Program-made: the position numbers and the translations under genes | NCBI GenBank assembly: GCA_033442325.1 | Contig: JAWQFM010000003.1 | Span: 1,270,473 to 1,334,472, forward strand | Reading direction: 5' to 3' | Source: Salpingoeca rosetta | Lineage: Eukaryota > Protista > Choanoflagellata | DNA: 64,000 nucleotides | Shown: in pieces, positions 3,478-42,343 of the stretch | How positions within the stretch are numbered: position 1 is the stretch's first letter | How the letters are laid out: each line of letters starts with the position of its first letter | The notes under the pieces: generated by a model | The model's database searches: none | What the model saw: only the letters and a program-made list of their open reading frames with translations | Told to the model about the DNA's origin: nothing

Positions 3478-4882
3478 AATGCAAATGCACGAACAGCAGG
3501 CTGCACTGCCCAACCAACCGTTGTGGCGGAAGACCTTGATCTTTGCGCCGGTGAGGCGGGCGCCAAGGACGAGGGAGGCATGGTTCAACTCGTCGCTGAT
3601 CAGCAGACACCCCTACACGAACACATGCACATGCATACAGTGCAAGCATGGTTGTGGGTGGATGGGTGAGTCGTGGGTTAGAATGAGCGCACACACGAGA
3701 AAGGAAAATGCCAATCTGCCGAGCACCAAAACAATGGAGGCACACAGACACAGATACAGGCACATACACACACACATTTACACAGACATACACGCGCAAA
3801 GGTGAGCGAGCAGCCATGGCATTGAGCACCTTGCCGACGAGGACGGGCATGTTTGTTGAGTTTGTTGCGAATCCCATGCCAAAGACCATTGCATCCTCCT
3901 TGCCAATGAAGCGAGCAACACAGTCCTCAAGCTCCTTGTGAATTGTACTCGTGCCTGAAAGAGTGGCGACGAAGGGGGCACAAGCCGTGGTAATTCTGTG
4001 AGAAGGTGTGACGACACCACGATGCAAACTGGCACCAGTCGAGGGACAGAAGCAGGGGGAGAGACAGACGGATAGAGTAACACATCGACACATGCATGTA
4101 CACACACACATGCACACACACACACACACATATGAGGCAGGCCAAAACGAACCGAGCTCAGCGCGTGGGCTGGAGTAGGTGACACCGTACTTCTTGATGG
4201 CATCAATGGTGGCGTCGGCACAGGGGCCTGACGATGACGATGATGGTGGTGGTGGTGGTAATGGTGATAGCAGTTAGCATGTGCATGACAAGAAAGTGGA
4301 TGTGACTGCACCACTCACGAACAACTGCACTGTTGTTGTGGCGCTTGTTGACACGAGTGCGAGCCACTTCATCACTCACACACTACCATGTCCATGGCCT
4401 GCCCAACAATGACGCGCAAGGCGTAAACAAACAAAAGTGGACCACGCACCCTTGTTCTCGGCAAAGCCAAGGTAGTTGTATGATCCGAGGTTGATGTACG
4501 ACTTCTTCTCACCCGTGGGCCTGCACCAACCAAAGCAAATGCGTGTGAGAGCTTGTGGGCGTACTGTCACCGGTTGCTTTTGCTTGCAGCGTGCGCTGCG
4601 TTGAGTGTGCATGTGCGCTCGTGTGTACATGTGCAGGTGACATGCTGTGTACATGTGTACGTGTGTGAATGCGTGCATGCACAAAACTGTGCGGTTGTCT
4701 GGGCAAAGTGTGTATCAACGTACTGGAAGGTCCATCCGTGGTCCTTTGATTCGCGCTCGACAAGGGTGAAGGTGGAGCCAGGCGTGCTGCAGATGGGGCG
4801 GTTCCAGCAGTCGCGGATGCGGCGGTACAGGTTGCGGGTGTAGAACGCCTCAAAGTCGCGGTACAGTGGCGGGAAGCTCTGG

Positions 4883-36572: not shown

Positions 36573-37624
36573 TGCAAACCTGTGGATGCTGCGGTGAACG
36601 CGGCCGTTTTTAGGACGTGCACAAGTGATAGCAACAAGAGTACGGCAGCCTGTGCAGGGGTGCAGGGGTAGGTGGCATGAGGTCCGTGAGACGGTCATTG
36701 TGTTGCAGCGAGCATGTACCTCAGCGTAGGGGTCAAGAGGCACATGGAGACACCATCACCGAGCACCGAGCACATTGCCACGTTGCCCTTGTATCAGCAT
36801 GTGCAGCCCGTGACGTACCCCATACTTGCGGCTACCCAAGTAGCGCTCCAACTGCCGGAAAGCAAGCAGGCATACGCTGCCAATCAACAAGCTTGGGTAA
36901 GACGGGTATGCTAAGCTGCTCACCTATCCAGCCGCGTGTGCGTGTGTGCGTGTGTGTGCGTGAGCGTGTGTGCGTGTGTGCGTGTGTGTGTATGTGTGTG
37001 AGCGACCTTGTAAAGCTCGAACATTGCATCGTGAGGCCGCAGACGCTCGTCCTACCGTTTGCACGCCAAGCCACATTCAGTGCCACACAACACACCACAC
37101 CACAACACACCACACCACACCACACCACAGCACAACACAACACAACACAACACAACACAACACAACACAACACAACACAACACAACACAACACAACACAA
37201 CACAACACAACACAAACATCATCAAACAGACATAAACAACACCGTCAGGCTACGCACGGGAAACGATTGACACAGGTGCTGTGAGGCTGCGCCACCAACG
37301 CGCGACAAGCACAGCCACGTCGACAGGCCTGACGAGGCCAACAGGACCTGGAAGGCATATCGGGAACAGGGATTGCGGAGCCAATCACACCCAGCAAAGA
37401 TGTGATGCGATGTGGGGTGATGGCGTGACAATGATGATGTTGGGGGAGAAGAACAAAACTAAGGCAGGAGAAACGAGACAGGCTCAAGACATGATGAGGA
37501 AGCCTAGCTGATACAAACGCACACACGCACGGTGCAAGCAGCACCAGCGCAGTACCATGTCAACAACCACAAAAGCACGTACCTTCGTCAAGGTGCACCC
37601 TTGAAACGCAGCCAGCCCGAACAT
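35361..37624 (-). CDS. UBAC2: UBAC2-like protein (rhomboid-like membrane domain plus C-terminal UBA), multi-exon, spans gap 36154-36253
   Basis: MFGLAAFQGCTLTK; LIGSVCLLAFRQLERYLGSRKYG (cf. UBAC2 FR.FERR.GSRKF); GPIAVVAALGLLYLQYVP; UBA domain NIAALVAMGFPQESARWALTQTGNDLQ | AAVELL. Confidence 0.8.
36154..36253. other. Assembly gap (100 N)
   Basis: Run of n. Confidence 1.
37087..37214 (+). repeat. (CAACA)n/(CACCA)n pentanucleotide repeat in a UBAC2 intron
   Basis: Seen directly. Confidence 0.9.
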
Positions 37625-37932
37625 TCCCACGGGCCTCAGCTGTTGGTGGTTGCTCGGTCGGTTGGGGTGGTTGTCATCGGCTGTCGGCGTTGTTGGCTGG
37701 TCAACTGTTTACGACAGCATTTAATTCACTGGCCGCATCTGCTGCACAACAACAAGCAAGCAACAAGCAAGCAACAAGCAACAAACACTGATCGATCGCC
37801 ACACCCCCTCCTCCTCCTGCCCTCTCTCTCTCTCTCCCTCTCTCACGCACACTTACGTGACACTCTCAGCTTCGTTTGTGGATGGGGCGCCGACGGTCTG
37901 GGTTAGGCCGAGTTCGAGATTTACGAAGCAAC

Positions 37933-40900
37933 ATGGAGTTGGAGCCACTCAACACCAACAACGGGGGTTCCTCCACAACCACCTGGATGGAAGATCCGCC
38001 TGGGTTTTCGGACGACGGCGATGACATGACACGCAGCAGCAGCAGCGGAAGCGCAGAGCAGTACGTGCCGGCCAAGAAGCAGTTGACGGAGCACACAAAG
38101 CCAGTGCACGCGCTCGAGTTTGCCTCTGACGGCCGCACCATCATCAGCGCGAGCGCAGACACCCTGGCCAAGATCTGGGACCTGCCATCCGGCAAGTGCC
38201 TGCACACGCTCACGGGCCACACGGATGCCGTCACCTGCGCAGCCATCAGCCAAAACGTCAAGTTTGCAGTGACCGGCAGCAAGGACGGCACGGCCCGCGT
38301 GTGGAACGTGGAAACGGGCGCGTGTGAGACCGTCATCAAGCAGGCGAACACCGCCGGTCGCGCCGTGCTCTCCATCAACATCACCCCGGACGCGAAGCAC
38401 GTCATCTTGGGCTCCAACACGGGCACGGTCAGCATCCACGAGCGGCAGGGCGGCGCCCTCGTCGCCAAGCTGGAGGGCCACGCGGAGGCCGTGCTTGGGA
38501 TTGCCGTCTCGCCAAACGGTGCCTTCATCATCAGCAGCAGCGAGGACAAGACCATCCGCGTGTGGGACGCAGACACCACCGTGTGCCTGCGAAAGATGAC
38601 GGGCCACGGTGGCAGCGTCAACGCCGTCGTCGTCAGCCCAGACGGCCAGTTCATCGTCAGCGGCAGCAAGGACGAGACCATCAAGGTGTGGAGCCTGGCC
38701 ACGGGCGACTGCCTGCGCTCCATGAAGGGCCACGTCGACGACATCTACGACGTTGCCATCACCCACGACGGCCTCTTTGTCGTCAGCGCCAGCAACGACG
38801 ACACCGTGCGCGTGTGGAGCTTCCACACCGGCGCCTGCCTGCAGGTTCTGCGCGGGCACACGGACGTGGTCCTCAGCGTGGCCGTCAGCCCCGGTGGCTG
38901 GCACATTGTCAGCGGCGGCGGCACCAAGCTGCACCTCAAGGACACGTCCGTGCGCGTGTGGAGCCTGGCCACGGGGGCGCGCCAGCGGGTGTTGCACGGG
39001 CACACGGCAAGCGTCAAGGCCGTCGCCGTCAGCCAGCGCTCAGACCTCGTTGTCTCCGCCAGCAACGATGGCACGGCAAAGGTGTGGGACCTGGCCACGG
39101 GCGCGTGTGTGCACACGTTTGACGGTCACACGGACTACGTGCGCGGGGTTGCGCTCAGCCCCGACGACAGCTTCACGGTGACGGGCAGCTGCGACACGAC
39201 GGTGCGCGTGTGGGACAACGCCACGGGCGCCTGCATCAAGGTGCTTGAGGGCCACACGTTCACCGTGGCGGCGCTCGCCGTCGCCGCAAACAGCAAGACC
39301 ATCGCCAGCGGCGGCTGGGACAGCACCATCAAGCTGTGGTCGTGGCCGGACGGTGCATGCACGCACACGCTGCAGGGCCACGGTGGCAAGATCCTGGCCC
39401 TGTCGCTGGGGCCAACGCCTACCACGCTCCTCAGCGCAAGCGAGGACTGCACCGTGAAAATGTGGGAGATGAACACGGGCCGCTGCTCCCTTACGCTCGA
39501 GGGCCACACGGACGCCGTGAACGGGGCCGTGGCCACACCGGACGGCAAGTTCGTGGTGAGCGGCAGCGACGACGGCAGCCTGGTGCTGTGGGACCTGGAC
39601 ATGGGTGGCGCCCCCGTGCGCAAGCTGCTCGGGCACGCGGGCCGCGTGTACTCCGTGGACGTGAGCCGTGACGGCAAGTACCTGCTCAGCGGGTCCTGGG
39701 ACAAGACAGCGAAGGTGTGGGATCTGCAGAGCGGCGAGTGCCTGCGCACGTTTGGGGAGCATGGCGACCGTGTGCGCTGCGGCGTGCTGAAGGGCAGCGA
39801 CGTGGTGGTGCTTGCGGTCGGCAGCAAGGCCCGGTGCGCCACGCTCAACCTGTGCTTCGACTACCCGACCGTCGCCTACAACAAGGAGGCCAACATGGAC
39901 GGCTTCCTCACAGACACGGACCAGCACGTGGACGCGTACTCGCTCAGCTTCGTGCAGCCGCTGCTGGCCGAGGGCGCCAGGCAGGGCCGCGTGGACAACA
40001 TTGCGTCGCTCACGGACCGCAACCCGCCCATTGCCATCGACTTTCGCTCCCTGCTCAGCGCCGCGCTGGACTCGCACGCGGAGGACGCGGTGCGACTGGT
40101 GGTGGACCTCATCATCCAGGCCATCCGCCACACGCTGCGTGGCGAGCCGGGCCTGTTCTGGTCGCCCGAGGTCAACCACAGCATCCACATTGAGCTTGCG
40201 CGGCTGGTGCAGCGGTTCCCGTCGCTGGTGGAGGTGCTCATGACCTCGTGCCCGCTCGTGCCCTCCAGCGCAGCCGCCATCTCCTTCTTCTCCGTGTCGG
40301 AGTTTGTGGGCAGCGAGCAGGACAACGCCGGCTACATGGAGTTTTGCCCCTGCGACTACCTCGACTACCCAGCCTGGTCTCGCATGCAGGCGAAGGAGAG
40401 CACGACGCGCGTGGAGCTCCGACCCGTTCTTCCGCGCCCGCCAACGGCGCTGCGGCGCAAGAAGACGGTGACGCGCAATAGCCTGACCACGCCCCCGCTG
40501 CTGGACCCGGACGATGCTGGGCACCAGCAGGCCATGACCACCGTGGAGAACCTCGTGCTCCCCTTTCCCGATTTGGCAGGCAGCGAGGCGTGCGGCGTGG
40601 ACTTCCTGCACGAGCTGCTGCGCACGGGCCGGTCGGACACGTTTGCCGGCATTGTGCCGCAGATGCTGGTGGAGTACCGCTGGCGCTGCTTTGGGCAACG
40701 CATCCACTTGCGCAACCTCCTCGTGTACATGGTCGCCCTGGCCCTGTTTGTCACCATGGGGTTCCTGGGCCAGTACCTGGAGGGCACCTCTGTAACCGAC
40801 TTCAACGAGGGCCGGCGAGACGAGGCCAAGCCCGCAGCCATTGTCGTGGGCGCGTGTCTGCTCGCCGTGACCACATACCACGCGGTGCGCGAGATTCGCC

Positions 40901-41787
40901 AGGCGTGGATGGAGCGCGCTGGGCTGTACTACCTCAAGTCTGTGTGGAACTGGCTGGACATGCTTCGCATCATCATGTCGTACGTGGGGGTGATTGCGCT
41001 CTTTGTGGACGCGCACAAGACCTCCCGCTTCTTCTTTGCCATCGGCAGCTACGTGTTCTGGTTTGGCATCCTGTTCTTCCTGCAGGCCTTCTCCTCCACA
41101 GGCCCGCTGGTGCGCATGGTGATTGAGATTATGGTTGGCATGCGCTGGTTCCTGCTCGTGCTGGGCATTGCGCTGCTCGCCACCGCCAACGTGTTTGTGC
41201 TGCTGGTGGAGGAGACGCCGGCACCAAACGGGTACGAGGACGTGGCCGACGTGCTGCTGACCATGTTCCGGCTACTTATGCTGTCGGACCTTGAGCTGCT
41301 CAACTTCTCCGCGGGCTCGTACACCATCCCGCTGAAGCTGGTGTGGGTGCTCACCATGATCCTCGTGCCGATTGTGCTGCTGAACCTGCTGATTGCCCTG
41401 ATGAGTGACAGCTACGAGCTCATCCAGGACAAGGCCGTGGTGGAGTTCCAGCGCCTGCGCGCACAGATTATCCGCGAGCAGGAGATTTTCTTCGACAGGA
41501 GCGCGTTCCAGCGCAAGGACTGGTATCCGCGCTTCCTGCACGTGCTCCTGCCGCGCGGCCGCAACACCGGCGGCGCAGACTCGTCGCAGTGGCAGGGCGT
41601 GCTGCACGCACTCCGCGGGGACATGCACGAGCTGGCGACGACAACCAATGAGCGCATTGATGCCACGGAGGCGAAGGTGGACCGCTTGCTTGAGAAGGTG
41701 AACAGCGCCAACGAGAGGCTGACGCAGCAGCTCAACGACATCCGTCTTCTTCTCCACAGGCCCAGCACCCGCGCCCCGAGGACGTGA
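37933..41787 (+). CDS. Intronless WD40-repeat / TRP-type cation channel fusion (~1,284 aa): 14 WD40 repeats, helical linker, six TM helices with pore, TRP-like helix, coiled coil
   Basis: One ORF from MELEPLN. GH...W[DS] repeats at ~38083-39850. Pre-S1 QMLVEYRWRCFG; S3 WNWLDMLRII; S4-S5 linker LQAFSSTGPLVRMVIEIMVGMRWFLLV; pore LLTMFRLLMLSD; S6 IVLLNLLIALMSDSY; post-S6 helix EFQRLRAQII; coiled coil ~41625-41755. A short upstream in-frame extension is possible. Confidence 0.93.
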   Translation: MELEPLNTNNGGSSTTTWMEDPPGFSDDGDDMTRSSSSGSAEQYVPAKKQLTEHTKPVHALEFASDGRTIISASADTLAKIWDLPSGKCLHTLTGHTDAVTCAAISQNVKFAVTGSKDGTARVWNVETGACETVIKQANTAGRAVLSINITPDAKHVILGSNTGTVSIHERQGGALVAKLEGHAEAVLGIAVSPNGAFIISSSEDKTIRVWDADTTVCLRKMTGHGGSVNAVVVSPDGQFIVSGSKDETIKVWSLATGDCLRSMKGHVDDIYDVAITHDGLFVVSASNDDTVRVWSFHTGACLQVLRGHTDVVLSVAVSPGGWHIVSGGGTKLHLKDTSVRVWSLATGARQRVLHGHTASVKAVAVSQRSDLVVSASNDGTAKVWDLATGACVHTFDGHTDYVRGVALSPDDSFTVTGSCDTTVRVWDNATGACIKVLEGHTFTVAALAVAANSKTIASGGWDSTIKLWSWPDGACTHTLQGHGGKILALSLGPTPTTLLSASEDCTVKMWEMNTGRCSLTLEGHTDAVNGAVATPDGKFVVSGSDDGSLVLWDLDMGGAPVRKLLGHAGRVYSVDVSRDGKYLLSGSWDKTAKVWDLQSGECLRTFGEHGDRVRCGVLKGSDVVVLAVGSKARCATLNLCFDYPTVAYNKEANMDGFLTDTDQHVDAYSLSFVQPLLAEGARQGRVDNIASLTDRNPPIAIDFRSLLSAALDSHAEDAVRLVVDLIIQAIRHTLRGEPGLFWSPEVNHSIHIELARLVQRFPSLVEVLMTSCPLVPSSAAAISFFSVSEFVGSEQDNAGYMEFCPCDYLDYPAWSRMQAKESTTRVELRPVLPRPPTALRRKKTVTRNSLTTPPLLDPDDAGHQQAMTTVENLVLPFPDLAGSEACGVDFLHELLRTGRSDTFAGIVPQMLVEYRWRCFGQRIHLRNLLVYMVALALFVTMGFLGQYLEGTSVTDFNEGRRDEAKPAAIVVGACLLAVTTYHAVREIRQAWMERAGLYYLKSVWNWLDMLRIIMSYVGVIALFVDAHKTSRFFFAIGSYVFWFGILFFLQAFSSTGPLVRMVIEIMVGMRWFLLVLGIALLATANVFVLLVEETPAPNGYEDVADVLLTMFRLLMLSDLELLNFSAGSYTIPLKLVWVLTMILVPIVLLNLLIALMSDSYELIQDKAVVEFQRLRAQIIREQEIFFDRSAFQRKDWYPRFLHVLLPRGRNTGGADSSQWQGVLHALRGDMHELATTTNERIDATEAKVDRLLEKVNSANERLTQQLNDIRLLLHRPSTRAPRT

Positions 41788-41910
41788 GACGATGATGGTG
41801 GATGGGTCGATCGATGGTTGGATCGATGGATCGCGTGCATCTGTATTTTTGTTTTGAAATGGACTTGCTTGTTTCTTTCCAGAGTCGCGATTCTTGTTTA
41901 TTTTGTCTCT

Positions 41911-41941
<31 letters not shown>

Positions 41942-42048
41942 AGGAGAGAGACTGCGTGTGTGTGTGTGTGTGTGTGTGAGGGAGGAGAGAGACTGTGTGT
42001 GTGTGTGTGTGTTTGTGTGCATGCTTCGTTTTGCTGTGTGTATTTGTT

Positions 42049-42343
42049 TCAGAGTGGCACTTTTTTCTCAAACGCGTGGTTTTTGGGATATTGGTCTCTT
42101 ATTCTGTTCAGTTGTGCCAGGGCAGTAAAACGCTGCCAACGCATGCATGACGCATGAAGACGATACCGCGAGTGATATGATGTGTGATGTGTGTGTGTGT
42201 TGTGCCAAGTGTGTTGTTGACTGGAATTCACACACGCACGAGCATGAGGTGTGTGATGAAGAGCACACCACAGGCACCAAACAGCAATAAATAGAGCGGT
42301 TCCCCAAGAAACTCAATCTGGTACGCAATTGCCAACCACAAAC

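What the first reader, a model, noticed from the sequence alone, without database searches (positions are those of the whole stretch)
37933..41787. TRP-type ion channel with a double WD40 beta-propeller in place of ankyrin repeats: candidate sensory receptor class
Seen: one uninterrupted ORF joins 14 WD40 repeats (12 clear, repeats 3 and 14 degenerate; enough for two 7-bladed propellers) to a complete six-TM channel. The channel has pre-S1 YRW..FG, S3 WNWLD, S4-S5 TGPLVRM, S6 LLNLLIALMSDSY, a TRP-like helix and a C-terminal coiled coil. S4 lacks the repeated Arg of voltage sensors. Known: these S3, S4-S5 and S6 motifs are hallmarks of TRPA/TRPV/TRPN channels, which in animals carry N-terminal ankyrin repeats; no canonical animal TRP subfamily has WD40 propellers. 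Inference: a tetrameric cation channel with eight cytosolic propellers that couples ligand or protein binding to ion flux in a unicellular relative of animals. WD40-TRP fusions may already have been noted in choanoflagellates (I recall the name TRPW, unverified), so novelty must be checked.
Basis: partly seen in the sequence, partly recalled or inferred. Interest (0 to 1): 0.92.

Follow-up and report, generated by a model that had tools for sequence, protein, structure and literature searches.

The report
Known choanoflagellate TRPW channel gene (PTSG_02433)
This is a real, expressed, intron-free gene of the choanoflagellate Salpingoeca rosetta for a TRP-type ion channel with two WD40 propellers, but two 2026 studies already list this exact gene (PTSG_02433) in the named family TRPW, so it is not new.

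Summary

Stranded RNA-seq covers the gene continuously with no splice joints. One 4.2-kb transcript contig spans both halves, so it is one gene.

The genome is Salpingoeca rosetta. The channel domain is verbatim in Coyle et al. 2026 (bioRxiv 10.64898/2026.06.15.732144) as EGD81722 = PTSG_02433, classed TRPW. Mannsaker et al. 2026 (PNAS, PMC13663828; preprint supplement S3) also list PTSG_02433 as TRPW.

- It is not TRPW1. I infer TRPW1 to be PTSG_01562.
- It belongs to a separate, conserved double-propeller lineage, with orthologues in Hartaetosiga balthica and an ENA contig.
- Both arginines that hold the fatty-acid carboxylate in TRPW1 are replaced here (E1065, Q1178).
- A degenerate ankyrin-like domain lies between the propellers and the channel, so the WD40s are added to, rather than replacing, the ankyrin/linker module.

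This scan has already flagged other TRPW paralogues of this genome and judged them known.

The parts
37736..42145 (+). Transcript (approximate ends): 5'UTR from at or before 37736, 3'UTR to a poly(A) site near 42145
   Evidence: stranded raw RNA-seq (X19, X20) covers bins 37734-42242 on one strand with no joints. Contig X1 record 2 (4184 nt) spans 37736-41894. A loose A9 end lies behind 42145.
37882..41787 (+).
   Evidence: P0001, 1301 aa, 100%; the papers' numbering (ali_from 970) fits the 1301-aa form.
38056..38964 (+). WD40 repeats 1-7 (aa 42-344): first seven-bladed propeller; repeat 3 degenerate
38965..39852 (+). WD40 repeats 8-14 (aa 345-640): second seven-bladed propeller; repeat 14 degenerate
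39943..40284 (+). Helical linker domain (aa 671-784), three helix pairs, ankyrin-like remnant; no Pfam hit
   Evidence: pLDDT 80-98. (model residues from ~30 align to TRPV1 from 226 and TRPV3 from 242). (hhalign 75%, E 2.5e-5 to the Ank_2-bearing region of P0081). negative by Pfam and PDB sequence.
40285..40506 (+). Predicted disordered loop (aa 785-858)
   Evidence: pLDDT under 50 for model 145-219
40540..40707 (+). Pre-S1 region (aa 870-925): beta strand 871-875, short helices, YRW..FG motif at 915-921
40708..41094 (+). S1-S4 bundle (aa 926-1054), WNWLD in S3, S4 without an Arg ladder
41095..41127 (+). S4-S5 linker (aa 1055-1065), TGPLVRMVIE; E1065 stands where TRPW1 has R950
41128..41412 (+). 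Pore domain (aa 1066-1160): S5, pore helix 1104-1116, filter L-S-D1119-L-E1121, S6 with LLNLLIALMSDSY
41425..41487 (+). TRP-like helix (aa 1165-1185, VVEFQRLRAQIIREQ; F in place of the canonical TRP-box W)
41536..41553 (+). C-terminal beta strand (aa 1202-1207, LHVLLP); its position matches the strand that pairs with the pre-S1 strand in TRPV channels
   Evidence: E563-568; alignments run to model residue 570
41581..41757 (+). C-terminal long helix, predicted coiled coil (aa 1217-1275)
   Evidence: H578-636, pLDDT about 90; family feature

Best explanation
The gene is PTSG_02433 (EGD81722) of Salpingoeca rosetta, one of the 17-18 members of the TRPW family named in 2026.

Each subunit carries, in order: two cytosolic seven-bladed WD40 propellers; a degenerate ankyrin-like helical linker; a six-TM TRPV/TRPA-like channel domain with a two-acid selectivity filter (D1119, E1121) and the conserved S6 Asn; a TRP-like helix; and a C-terminal coiled coil.

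By analogy with TRPW1, whose cryo-EM structure is a domain-swapped tetramer and which is a ligand-gated, Ca2+-permeable, ruthenium-red-sensitive non-selective cation channel, four subunits most likely form a cation channel. Eight propellers would hang below it as docking platforms for cytoskeletal, flagellar or signalling partners.

Gating would come from a membrane-embedded ligand at the vanilloid-like pocket between S1-S4, the S4-S5 linker and the TRP helix. The ligand is probably not the TRPW1 fatty acid, because both carboxylate-binding arginines are replaced.

Shown here: gene structure, expression, domain anatomy, fold, family membership, purifying selection.
Inferred: tetramer, ion conduction, ligand gating, the role of the propellers.
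For: Identity:
- The genome holds PTSG_10886 at 100% identity.
- The channel domain is verbatim under EGD81722 and EP00044_P009493 with 'best_subfamily=TRPW'.
- EGD81722 = PTSG_02433.
- PTSG_02433 is listed TRPW/TRPW, WD40+, Ion_trans+, 6 TM.

Expression: stranded RNA-seq is continuous with no joints, and a 4.2-kb contig spans both halves.

Fold:
- C-half AF2 model: pLDDT 78.9, pTM 0.75.
- VIA Z 19.3, rmsd 2.7 A over 286 residues to the TRPV1 TMD.
- Foldseek to TRPA1, Nanchung-Inactive and TRPV3 at E about 1e-10.
- Family profile against PDB: Inactive 1e-50, TRPV3 1e-48, TRPA1 1e-40.

Propellers.

Phylogeny (85 TMDs, rooted on two TRPV-like ankyrin channels):
- The gene is nested in a 44-row clade (99/94) that holds TRPW1 and all S. 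rosetta paralogues tested.
- Its sisters are P0002 (100/99) and H. balthica m.42663 (100/100) (m.42663 is classed TRPW).

Selection against the P0002 orthologue: dN/dS 0.22 in the TMD, 0.33 in the WD40 region, 0.34 overall.

The filter acids and S6 motif are conserved across the family. The function of the family's type member is given.
Against: - No functional data exist for this paralogue. It is unknown whether it was among the seven TRPWs tested by Coyle et al.
- Mannsaker et al. caution that channel function of TRPWs needs experimental confirmation.
- Five of the seven TRPW1 pocket residues differ (E828->N, Q927->F, R950->E, R1063->Q differ; W891, R898 and I949 are kept).
- The TRP-box Trp is Phe.
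- The tetramer prediction gave no answer.
- My trees contain only two outgroup sequences (TRPV-like). Exclusion from TRPA/TRPM/TRPC therefore rests on the published trees.
- The cRFXa-mutant change is modest (log2FC -0.83), so a flagellar role is not indicated as strongly as for TRPW1 (-2.27).
Confidence: 0.9

Rival explanations
1. It is a TRPW-family protein that no longer conducts ions. In this reading it is a membrane-anchored WD40 scaffold (pseudo-channel) that organises partners at the flagellum or collar.
For: - No function has been shown for this paralogue.
- The TRP-box W is replaced by F, and the filter reads L-S-D-L-E against the family's G/A-D-F/Y-D.
- Mannsaker et al. note divergence in the pore regions of TRPWs.
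Against: - The TMD is the most constrained part of the protein (dN/dS 0.22, 78% identity to the orthologue).
- Both filter acids, the S6 LLNLLIALMSDSY gate motif and the TGPLVRM linker are kept.
- The TMD model superposes on open and closed TRPV1 at 2.7 A.
Confidence: 0.08
2. It is a member of an animal-type subfamily (TRPA, TRPV or TRPN) that secondarily gained WD40 repeats, rather than a member of a separate family.
For: - The best solved-structure matches are insect TRPV (Inactive), TRPA1 and TRPV3.
- An ankyrin-like remnant precedes pre-S1.
Against: - Relatives bearing WD40 match at E 1e-40 to 1e-104, against 1e-15 for TRPV/TRPA.
- In the rooted tree the TRPV-like outgroup lies more than 4.5 substitutions per site away, and the gene is nested with TRPW1.
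- Two published phylogenies that include this gene, together with S. rosetta TRPA, TRPV, TRPC and TRPM, place it in TRPW.
- There is no Pfam ankyrin hit.
Confidence: 0.02
3. The long ORF is an assembly or annotation artefact that joins a WD40 gene to a separate channel gene.
For: None was found. The only prior reason is that fusions of this kind are sometimes chimeric.
Against: - RNA depth is continuous at 15-120x on one strand across the junction, with no joints.
- Single contigs from two independent studies span 37857-41894.
- Orthologues P0002 and P0003 and many relatives have the same architecture.
- P0002 is also one uninterrupted ORF on its own contig.
Confidence: 0.005

Closest known systems
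TRPW family (Coyle et al. 2026, bioRxiv 10.64898/2026.06.15.732144; Mannsaker, Burkhardt & Colgren 2026, PNAS, PMC13663828)
   Same: This very gene (PTSG_02433/EGD81722) is in both papers' TRPW sets. It shares the N-terminal WD40 propellers, the type I TRP-like 6-TM domain, the TRP helix and the C-terminal coiled coil.
   Different: Nothing at family level. The papers do not discuss this paralogue individually in the text I could read.
TRPW1 of S. rosetta, inferred here to be PTSG_01562/EGD80980 at G000:C2 ~2.75 Mb. All seven published residue numbers fit this locus and its sequence is in Data S1.
   Same: Same family and overall plan. W891/W1005, R898/R1012 and I949/I1064 are conserved, as are the filter Asp and the S6 motif.
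   Different: - Only about 30% identity in the TMD, and a different subclade.
- TRPW1 has one resolved seven-blade propeller, against 14 repeats here.
- TRPW1 has a ~40-residue hydrophobic insert after the TRP helix that is absent here.
- Pocket residues E828, Q927, R950 and R1063 are N, F, E and Q here, so the 15M-9E and RS 39604 pharmacology cannot be transferred.
TRPV channels (TRPV1/3/6; insect Inactive-Nanchung) and TRPA1
   Same: - TMD fold (Z 19.3, rmsd 2.7 A to TRPV1).
- S6 LLN(L/M)LIALM motif.
- The S4-S5 linker/TRP-helix arrangement that forms a vanilloid-type pocket.
- Pre-S1 and C-terminal beta strands.
- A coiled coil, as in TRPA1.
   Different: - Sequence identity is only 12-20%.
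- WD40 propellers are absent from all animal TRPs.
- The ankyrin domain here is reduced to an unrecognisable (Pfam-negative) remnant.
- It belongs to a separate clade.
Tandem seven-bladed WD40 proteins (Nostoc 2ymu, AIP1 1nr0, Utp21, Apaf-1)
   Same: The N-terminal 600 residues model as two consecutive propellers. The match to 2ymu is 34% identity at E 1e-50.
   Different: Those proteins are soluble scaffolds or sensors. None is fused to a channel.

Membership tests
TRPW | Voltage-gated-superfamily 6-TM ion channel domain (Pfam PF00520) with a type I TRP fold | tested here: met
   - PF00520: 50.8 bits, cut-off 25.
- Six hydrophobic segments.
- VIA Z 19.3 with rmsd 2.7 A over 286 residues to TRPV1.
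- Foldseek to TRPA1 and TRPV at 1e-10.
TRPW | One or more N-terminal cytosolic WD40 beta-propellers on the same polypeptide | tested here: met
   - PF00400 x12, E 7e-122.
- 14 units.
- AF2 model with 55 strands.
- Tandem-propeller matches.
- One transcript.
TRPW | TM domain groups with the TRPW clade and not with TRPA/V/C/M | tested here: met
   - Nested at 99/94 with TRPW1 and all S. rosetta TRPW paralogues, rooted on two TRPV-like channels.
- The same sequence is labelled best_subfamily=TRPW in Coyle Data S3 and TRPW/TRPW in Mannsaker S3.
- Caveat: I could not add TRPA, TRPM or TRPC outgroups myself.
TRPW | TRP helix after S6 and a C-terminal coiled coil | tested here: met
   AF2 helices at aa 1168-1184 and 1217-1275 with high pLDDT. 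These are predictions, not experiment. The TRP-box Trp is Phe.
TRPW | Domain-swapped homotetramer | tested here: inconclusive
   Complex prediction on 4 copies of aa 1060-1284 gave 'no answer'. The tetramer is known only for TRPW1.
TRPW | Ligand-activated, Ca2+-permeable non-selective cation conductance | not testable with these tools
   This has been shown only for TRPW1. Here, only the conserved filter acids D1119/E1121 and the S6 motif are visible.
TRPW1-type lipid receptor (orthology to TRPW1 itself) | Pocket residues E828, W891, R898, Q927, I949, R950 and R1063 that bind RS 39604 and 15M-9E | tested here: not met
   The aligned residues are N928, W1005, R1012, F1042, I1064, E1065 and Q1178, so 3 of 7 are kept and both carboxylate-binding Arg are lost. 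The gene is in a different subclade.
TRPA / TRPV / TRPN | N-terminal ankyrin repeat domain recognisable by sequence | tested here: not met
   - No Pfam ankyrin family in the whole protein or in aa 620-920.
- No PDB sequence hit for the linker profile.
- Only a weak remnant (hhalign 75%; structural superposition).
TRPA / TRPV / TRPN | TM domain inside the TRPA, TRPV or TRPN clade | tested here: not met
   The TRPV-like outgroups P0020 and P0021 are distant. Published trees put the gene in TRPW.
TRPM | N-terminal SLOG/LSDAT (MHR) domain | tested here: not met
   No such Pfam family among the 60 hits, which are all WD40/propeller types plus Ion_trans.

The most novel reading that the evidence does not exclude
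PTSG_02433 and its orthologues (H. balthica m.42663; ENA contig protein P0002) may form a conserved, single-copy, double-propeller TRPW lineage that is functionally distinct from TRPW1. Its vanilloid-like pocket has swapped the two carboxylate-binding arginines for Glu and Gln while gaining R1061, R1174 and R1176 nearby. It would therefore sense a different chemical class, or be gated through its propellers by a protein partner. [quoted passage not shown]
Probability: 0.4. Interest if true: 0.35.

Novelty: already known. Interest (0 to 1): 0.15.

Why it matters
TRPW channels show that a sensory TRP family with a vanilloid-type lipid pocket predates animals and was later lost in them. That point has already been made in print, using this gene among others.

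The residual value here is practical:
- The single-exon gene model and its expression are confirmed.
- The published gene (PTSG_02433) and the TRPW1 locus (inferred PTSG_01562) are placed on this assembly.
- This paralogue is flagged as a good second target for de-orphanisation, because it is conserved across choanoflagellate genera yet has a re-charged ligand pocket and twice the propeller mass of TRPW1.

Tried and rejected
1. I first thought the window was not S. rosetta, because the S. rosetta hits were only 36-39% identical. That was wrong. The window's own protein has its name withheld, and PTSG_10886 is in the same genome at 100%.

2. Is it TRPW1? No. The seven published residue numbers fit only the C2 ~2.75 Mb locus.

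3. Outgroup hunt. The ORF in L019 looked TRPV-like against PDB but turned out to be PTSG_10899, itself a WD40-bearing TRPW. That used one large search without giving an outgroup. P0016 ('Nudt9 protein') was expected to be a TRPM outgroup, but its TMD falls in the TRPW1 subclade. Only P0020 and P0021 (TRPV-like) could serve as outgroups. Named TRPA, TRPM and TRPC sequences were not obtainable as tool references, and I did not paste the papers' FASTA.

4. Homotetramer prediction of aa 1060-1284 x4 gave 'no answer' (score 0.01). It is not evidence either way.

5. The linker domain alone has no Pfam hit and no PDB sequence hit.

6. The repeats are regular 42-mers but only 33% identical on average (maximum 52%), so there is no sign of recent repeat homogenisation.

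7. Rows left out of the second tree: eight long-branch or fragmentary rows (P0139, P0110, P0131, P0113, P0141, P0094, P0096, P0049). S. rosetta paralogues whose TMD is split by introns or only partly matched (C24 at 1.20 Mb and 101 kb, C17, C2 at 39 kb) were also left out.


Full report
**1. Observation**

The + strand is open from 37876 to the TGA at 41785-41787. Two in-frame ATGs are possible. 37882 gives 1301 aa, identical to the database gene call P0001. I number residues from 37933.

All quoted motifs are present: YRW at 915, FG at 920, WNWLD at 1005, TGPLVRM at 1056, LLNLLIALMSDSY at 1149.

A hydropathy scan gives six TM segments:

| Segment | Residues |
|---|---|
| S1 | 926-949 |
| S2 | 967-986 |
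| S3 | 1007-1028 |
| S4 | 1031-1054 |
| S5 | 1066-1095 |
| S6 | 1129-1160 |

S4 has one Arg only.

Pfam finds 12 significant WD40 repeats (E 6.8e-122) and many propeller families, and Ion_trans at 50.8 bits.

**2. One gene, expressed**

Two 2026 stranded RNA-seq runs cover 37734-42242 continuously at about 15-120x on one strand. There is no joint inside the ORF.

Transcript contigs from two further studies span 37857-41894 in one piece. One of them (4184 nt) reaches back to 37736. A short A-run loose end marks a poly(A) site near 42145.

So the gene is a single exon, and the WD40 and channel halves are on one mRNA.

All four runs read G instead of C at 38294, which changes Ala121 to Gly.

**3. 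Whose gene it is**

The window's genome (55.4 Mb, 68 contigs) contains S. rosetta PTSG_10886 at 100% identity. Earlier notes of this scan also call the genome S. rosetta.

It holds about 14-17 loci with related channel domains.

A literature search found two 2026 studies that define the family TRPW, meaning TRP channels with WD40 domains.

Searching their supplements for short peptides of this protein found its channel domain verbatim in three places:
- Under transcript EGD81722 (Coyle Data S1).
- Under EukProt EP00044_Salpingoeca_rosetta_P009493, with 'best_subfamily=TRPW' and coordinates 970-1185, which fit the 1301-aa form.
- Data S4 equates EGD81722 with PTSG_02433 and gives a cRFXa-mutant log2FC of -0.83.

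Mannsaker et al. Supplement S3 lists PTSG_02433 as TRPW by both network and phylogeny, WD40-positive, Ion_trans-positive, with 6 TM.

The finding is therefore an already catalogued member of an already named family, in the species where that family was defined.

**4. Structure**

*Propeller half.* AlphaFold2 of aa 41-660 (17-row alignment) gives pLDDT 85.9 with 55 strands and a soft hinge between repeats 7 and 8. Its best PDB matches are tandem seven-bladed propellers across the whole length: 2ymu (E 1e-50, 34% identity), UTP proteins, Apaf-1, AIP1 'two seven-bladed', Utp21.

*Channel half.* AlphaFold2 of aa 640-1284 (46-row alignment) gives pLDDT 78.9 and pTM 0.75. It shows, in order:
- a confident helical domain (aa 671-784);
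- a disordered loop (785-858);
- a beta strand and pre-S1 helices;
- S1-S6 with a pore helix (1104-1116);
- a TRP-like helix (1168-1184);
- a beta strand (1202-1207);
- a long C-terminal helix (1217-1275).

Foldseek puts TRPA1, Nanchung-Inactive, TRPV3 and TRPV1 on top at E about 1e-10. VIA-align gives Z 19.3 and rmsd 2.7 A over 286 residues to the TRPV1 TM domain. Longer alignments run from model residue ~30 to ~570 against TRPV1 226-748 and TRPV3 242-739. That range covers the last ankyrin repeats, linker, TM domain, TRP helix and C-terminal strand.

A family profile matches PDB TRPV3 from residue 157 to 710.

*The linker.* The linker of this orthogroup has no Pfam hit and no PDB sequence hit. 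It does align by hhalign (75%, E 2.5e-5) to the Ank_2-bearing stretch of relative P0081. In that alignment, 'LLSAALDSHAEDAVRLVV' lies opposite 'TALHIAAEHKLADAVTIIL'.

I read this as a degenerate ankyrin/linker module. The propellers are added in front of it and do not replace it. This fits Coyle et al.'s remark that some TRPWs keep ankyrin repeats between the WD40s and the channel.

**5. Place in the family**

An exhaustive HMMER scan with aa 880-1284 found 2405 relatives at E <= 1e-3, of which 47 were at <= 1e-30.

Many long relatives carry 10-17 or more WD40 repeats by an HMM built from this protein's own repeats. They align to its whole 600-residue N-terminus. Several that my HMM missed still have propeller families by Pfam.

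I built an ML tree of 85 TM domains (LG+C20+F+G4, ultrafast bootstrap/SH-aLRT). It was rooted on two ankyrin-bearing TRPV-like channels: P0020 (E 1e-56 to Nanchung/TRPV6) and P0021 (E 1e-35 to TRPV6). The results are (unrooted version):
- The gene groups with P0002 (100/99), then with P0003 (100/100).
- That trio sits inside a 38-row clade (98/89).
- The 38-row clade is inside a 44-row clade (99/94) that also holds the TRPW1 subclade and every S. rosetta paralogue I could include.

P0003 is Hartaetosiga balthica m.42663, classed TRPW by Mannsaker et al..

The main S. rosetta expansion (PTSG_10886, PTSG_07515, and loci on C2, C6, C16, C20 and C3 at 1.88 Mb) is a separate 16-row clade (100/99). 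PTSG_02433 is therefore a lone S. rosetta representative of an older lineage.

P0002 is a single uninterrupted ORF on an ENA contig. Against it, dN/dS is:

| Region | dN/dS |
|---|---|
| TM domain | 0.22 |
| Propellers | 0.33 |
| Linker | 0.48 |
| Overall | 0.34 |

All parts are under purifying selection.

**6. Relation to TRPW1**

The seven residues that Coyle et al. name (E828, W891, R898, Q927, I949, R950, R1063) fit, with one constant offset, only the locus at G000:C2 ~2.75 Mb. That locus encodes a 1200-aa protein, consistent with the stated 129 kDa.

Its channel domain appears in Data S1 as EGD80980 = PTSG_01562. So TRPW1 is a different gene, about 30% identical in the TM domain.

The pocket residues align as follows:

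| TRPW1 | This gene |
|---|---|
| E828 | N928 |
| W891 | W1005 |
| R898 | R1012 |
| Q927 | F1042 |
| I949 | I1064 |
| R950 | E1065 |
| R1063 | Q1178 |

R950 and R1063 form the salt bridges to the fatty-acid carboxylate, and R950D kills TRPW1 activation. Both are lost here. Other arginines lie nearby (R1061, R1174, R1176). I therefore do not transfer TRPW1's ligands to this paralogue.

The filter keeps both acids (D1119, E1121), and S6 keeps LLNLLIALMSDSY.

**7. Mechanism**

*Shown:* a transcribed single-exon gene; two propellers; an ankyrin-like remnant; a TRPV/TRPA-like TM fold; a TRP-like helix and coiled coil; TRPW membership; purifying selection.

*Inferred from TRPW1:* a domain-swapped tetramer; Ca2+-permeable non-selective cation conduction; gating by a membrane-embedded ligand at the S1-S4/S4-S5/TRP-helix pocket; propellers as partner-docking platforms, possibly at the flagellum.

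A tetramer prediction gave no answer.

**8. Verdict**

- The novelty is refuted.

This scan has also already judged other TRPW paralogues of this genome as known. Interest is low. The only open angle is the distinct pocket and double propeller of this conserved lineage.

Noticed in passing
window 38294: All four RNA data sets (two raw-read runs, two contig sets from other studies) read G where the assembly has C. This turns codon 121 from GCC (Ala) to GGC (Gly) in WD40 repeat 2. It is either an assembly error or a strain difference.
   Followed up: partly
window 37581-37635: A 55-nt segment is covered only by reads of the opposite strand sense, with loose ends on both sides in both raw runs and in a 904-nt contig. 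It is an internal exon of a spliced minus-strand neighbour, about 100-150 nt upstream of the TRPW transcript's 5' end.
   Followed up: no
window 37798-37856 and 41895-42027; L022:1-80 and 4149-4300: The 5'UTR is (CT)n-rich and the 3'UTR is (GT)n-rich. The orthologue's contig has the same CT-rich leader and GT-rich trailer although the sequence itself is not conserved.
   Followed up: no
L021:1365-4967 (G000:C2:2747864-2751466): This locus fits all seven published TRPW1 residue numbers and equals EGD80980/PTSG_01562 in Coyle Data S1. I infer that it is TRPW1. It has a ~40-residue hydrophobic insert after the TRP helix that the other TRPWs lack.
   Followed up: partly
L014 (G000:C36:~585 kb) = P0016: The S. 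rosetta 'Nudt9 protein' has SLOG and NUDIX domains, but its TM domain falls in the TRPW1 subclade (100/100). It is probably PTSG_11274, which the two papers classify differently (TRPW clade versus divergent TRPM). My tree supports a TRPW-type TM domain, which suggests domain shuffling.
   Followed up: partly
L019:58-2667 (G000:C25:~781 kb): PTSG_10899 is a very divergent WD40-bearing TRPW. Its best PDB sequence matches are TRPV1, TRPV4 and TRPV2, and it joins the TRPW1 subclade on a long branch.
   Followed up: partly
G000:C3:1875260-1876363 (same contig, about 540 kb beyond the window): Another TRPW paralogue (728-aa open frame) lies on the same contig. It belongs to the main S. rosetta expansion, not to this gene's lineage.
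   Followed up: no
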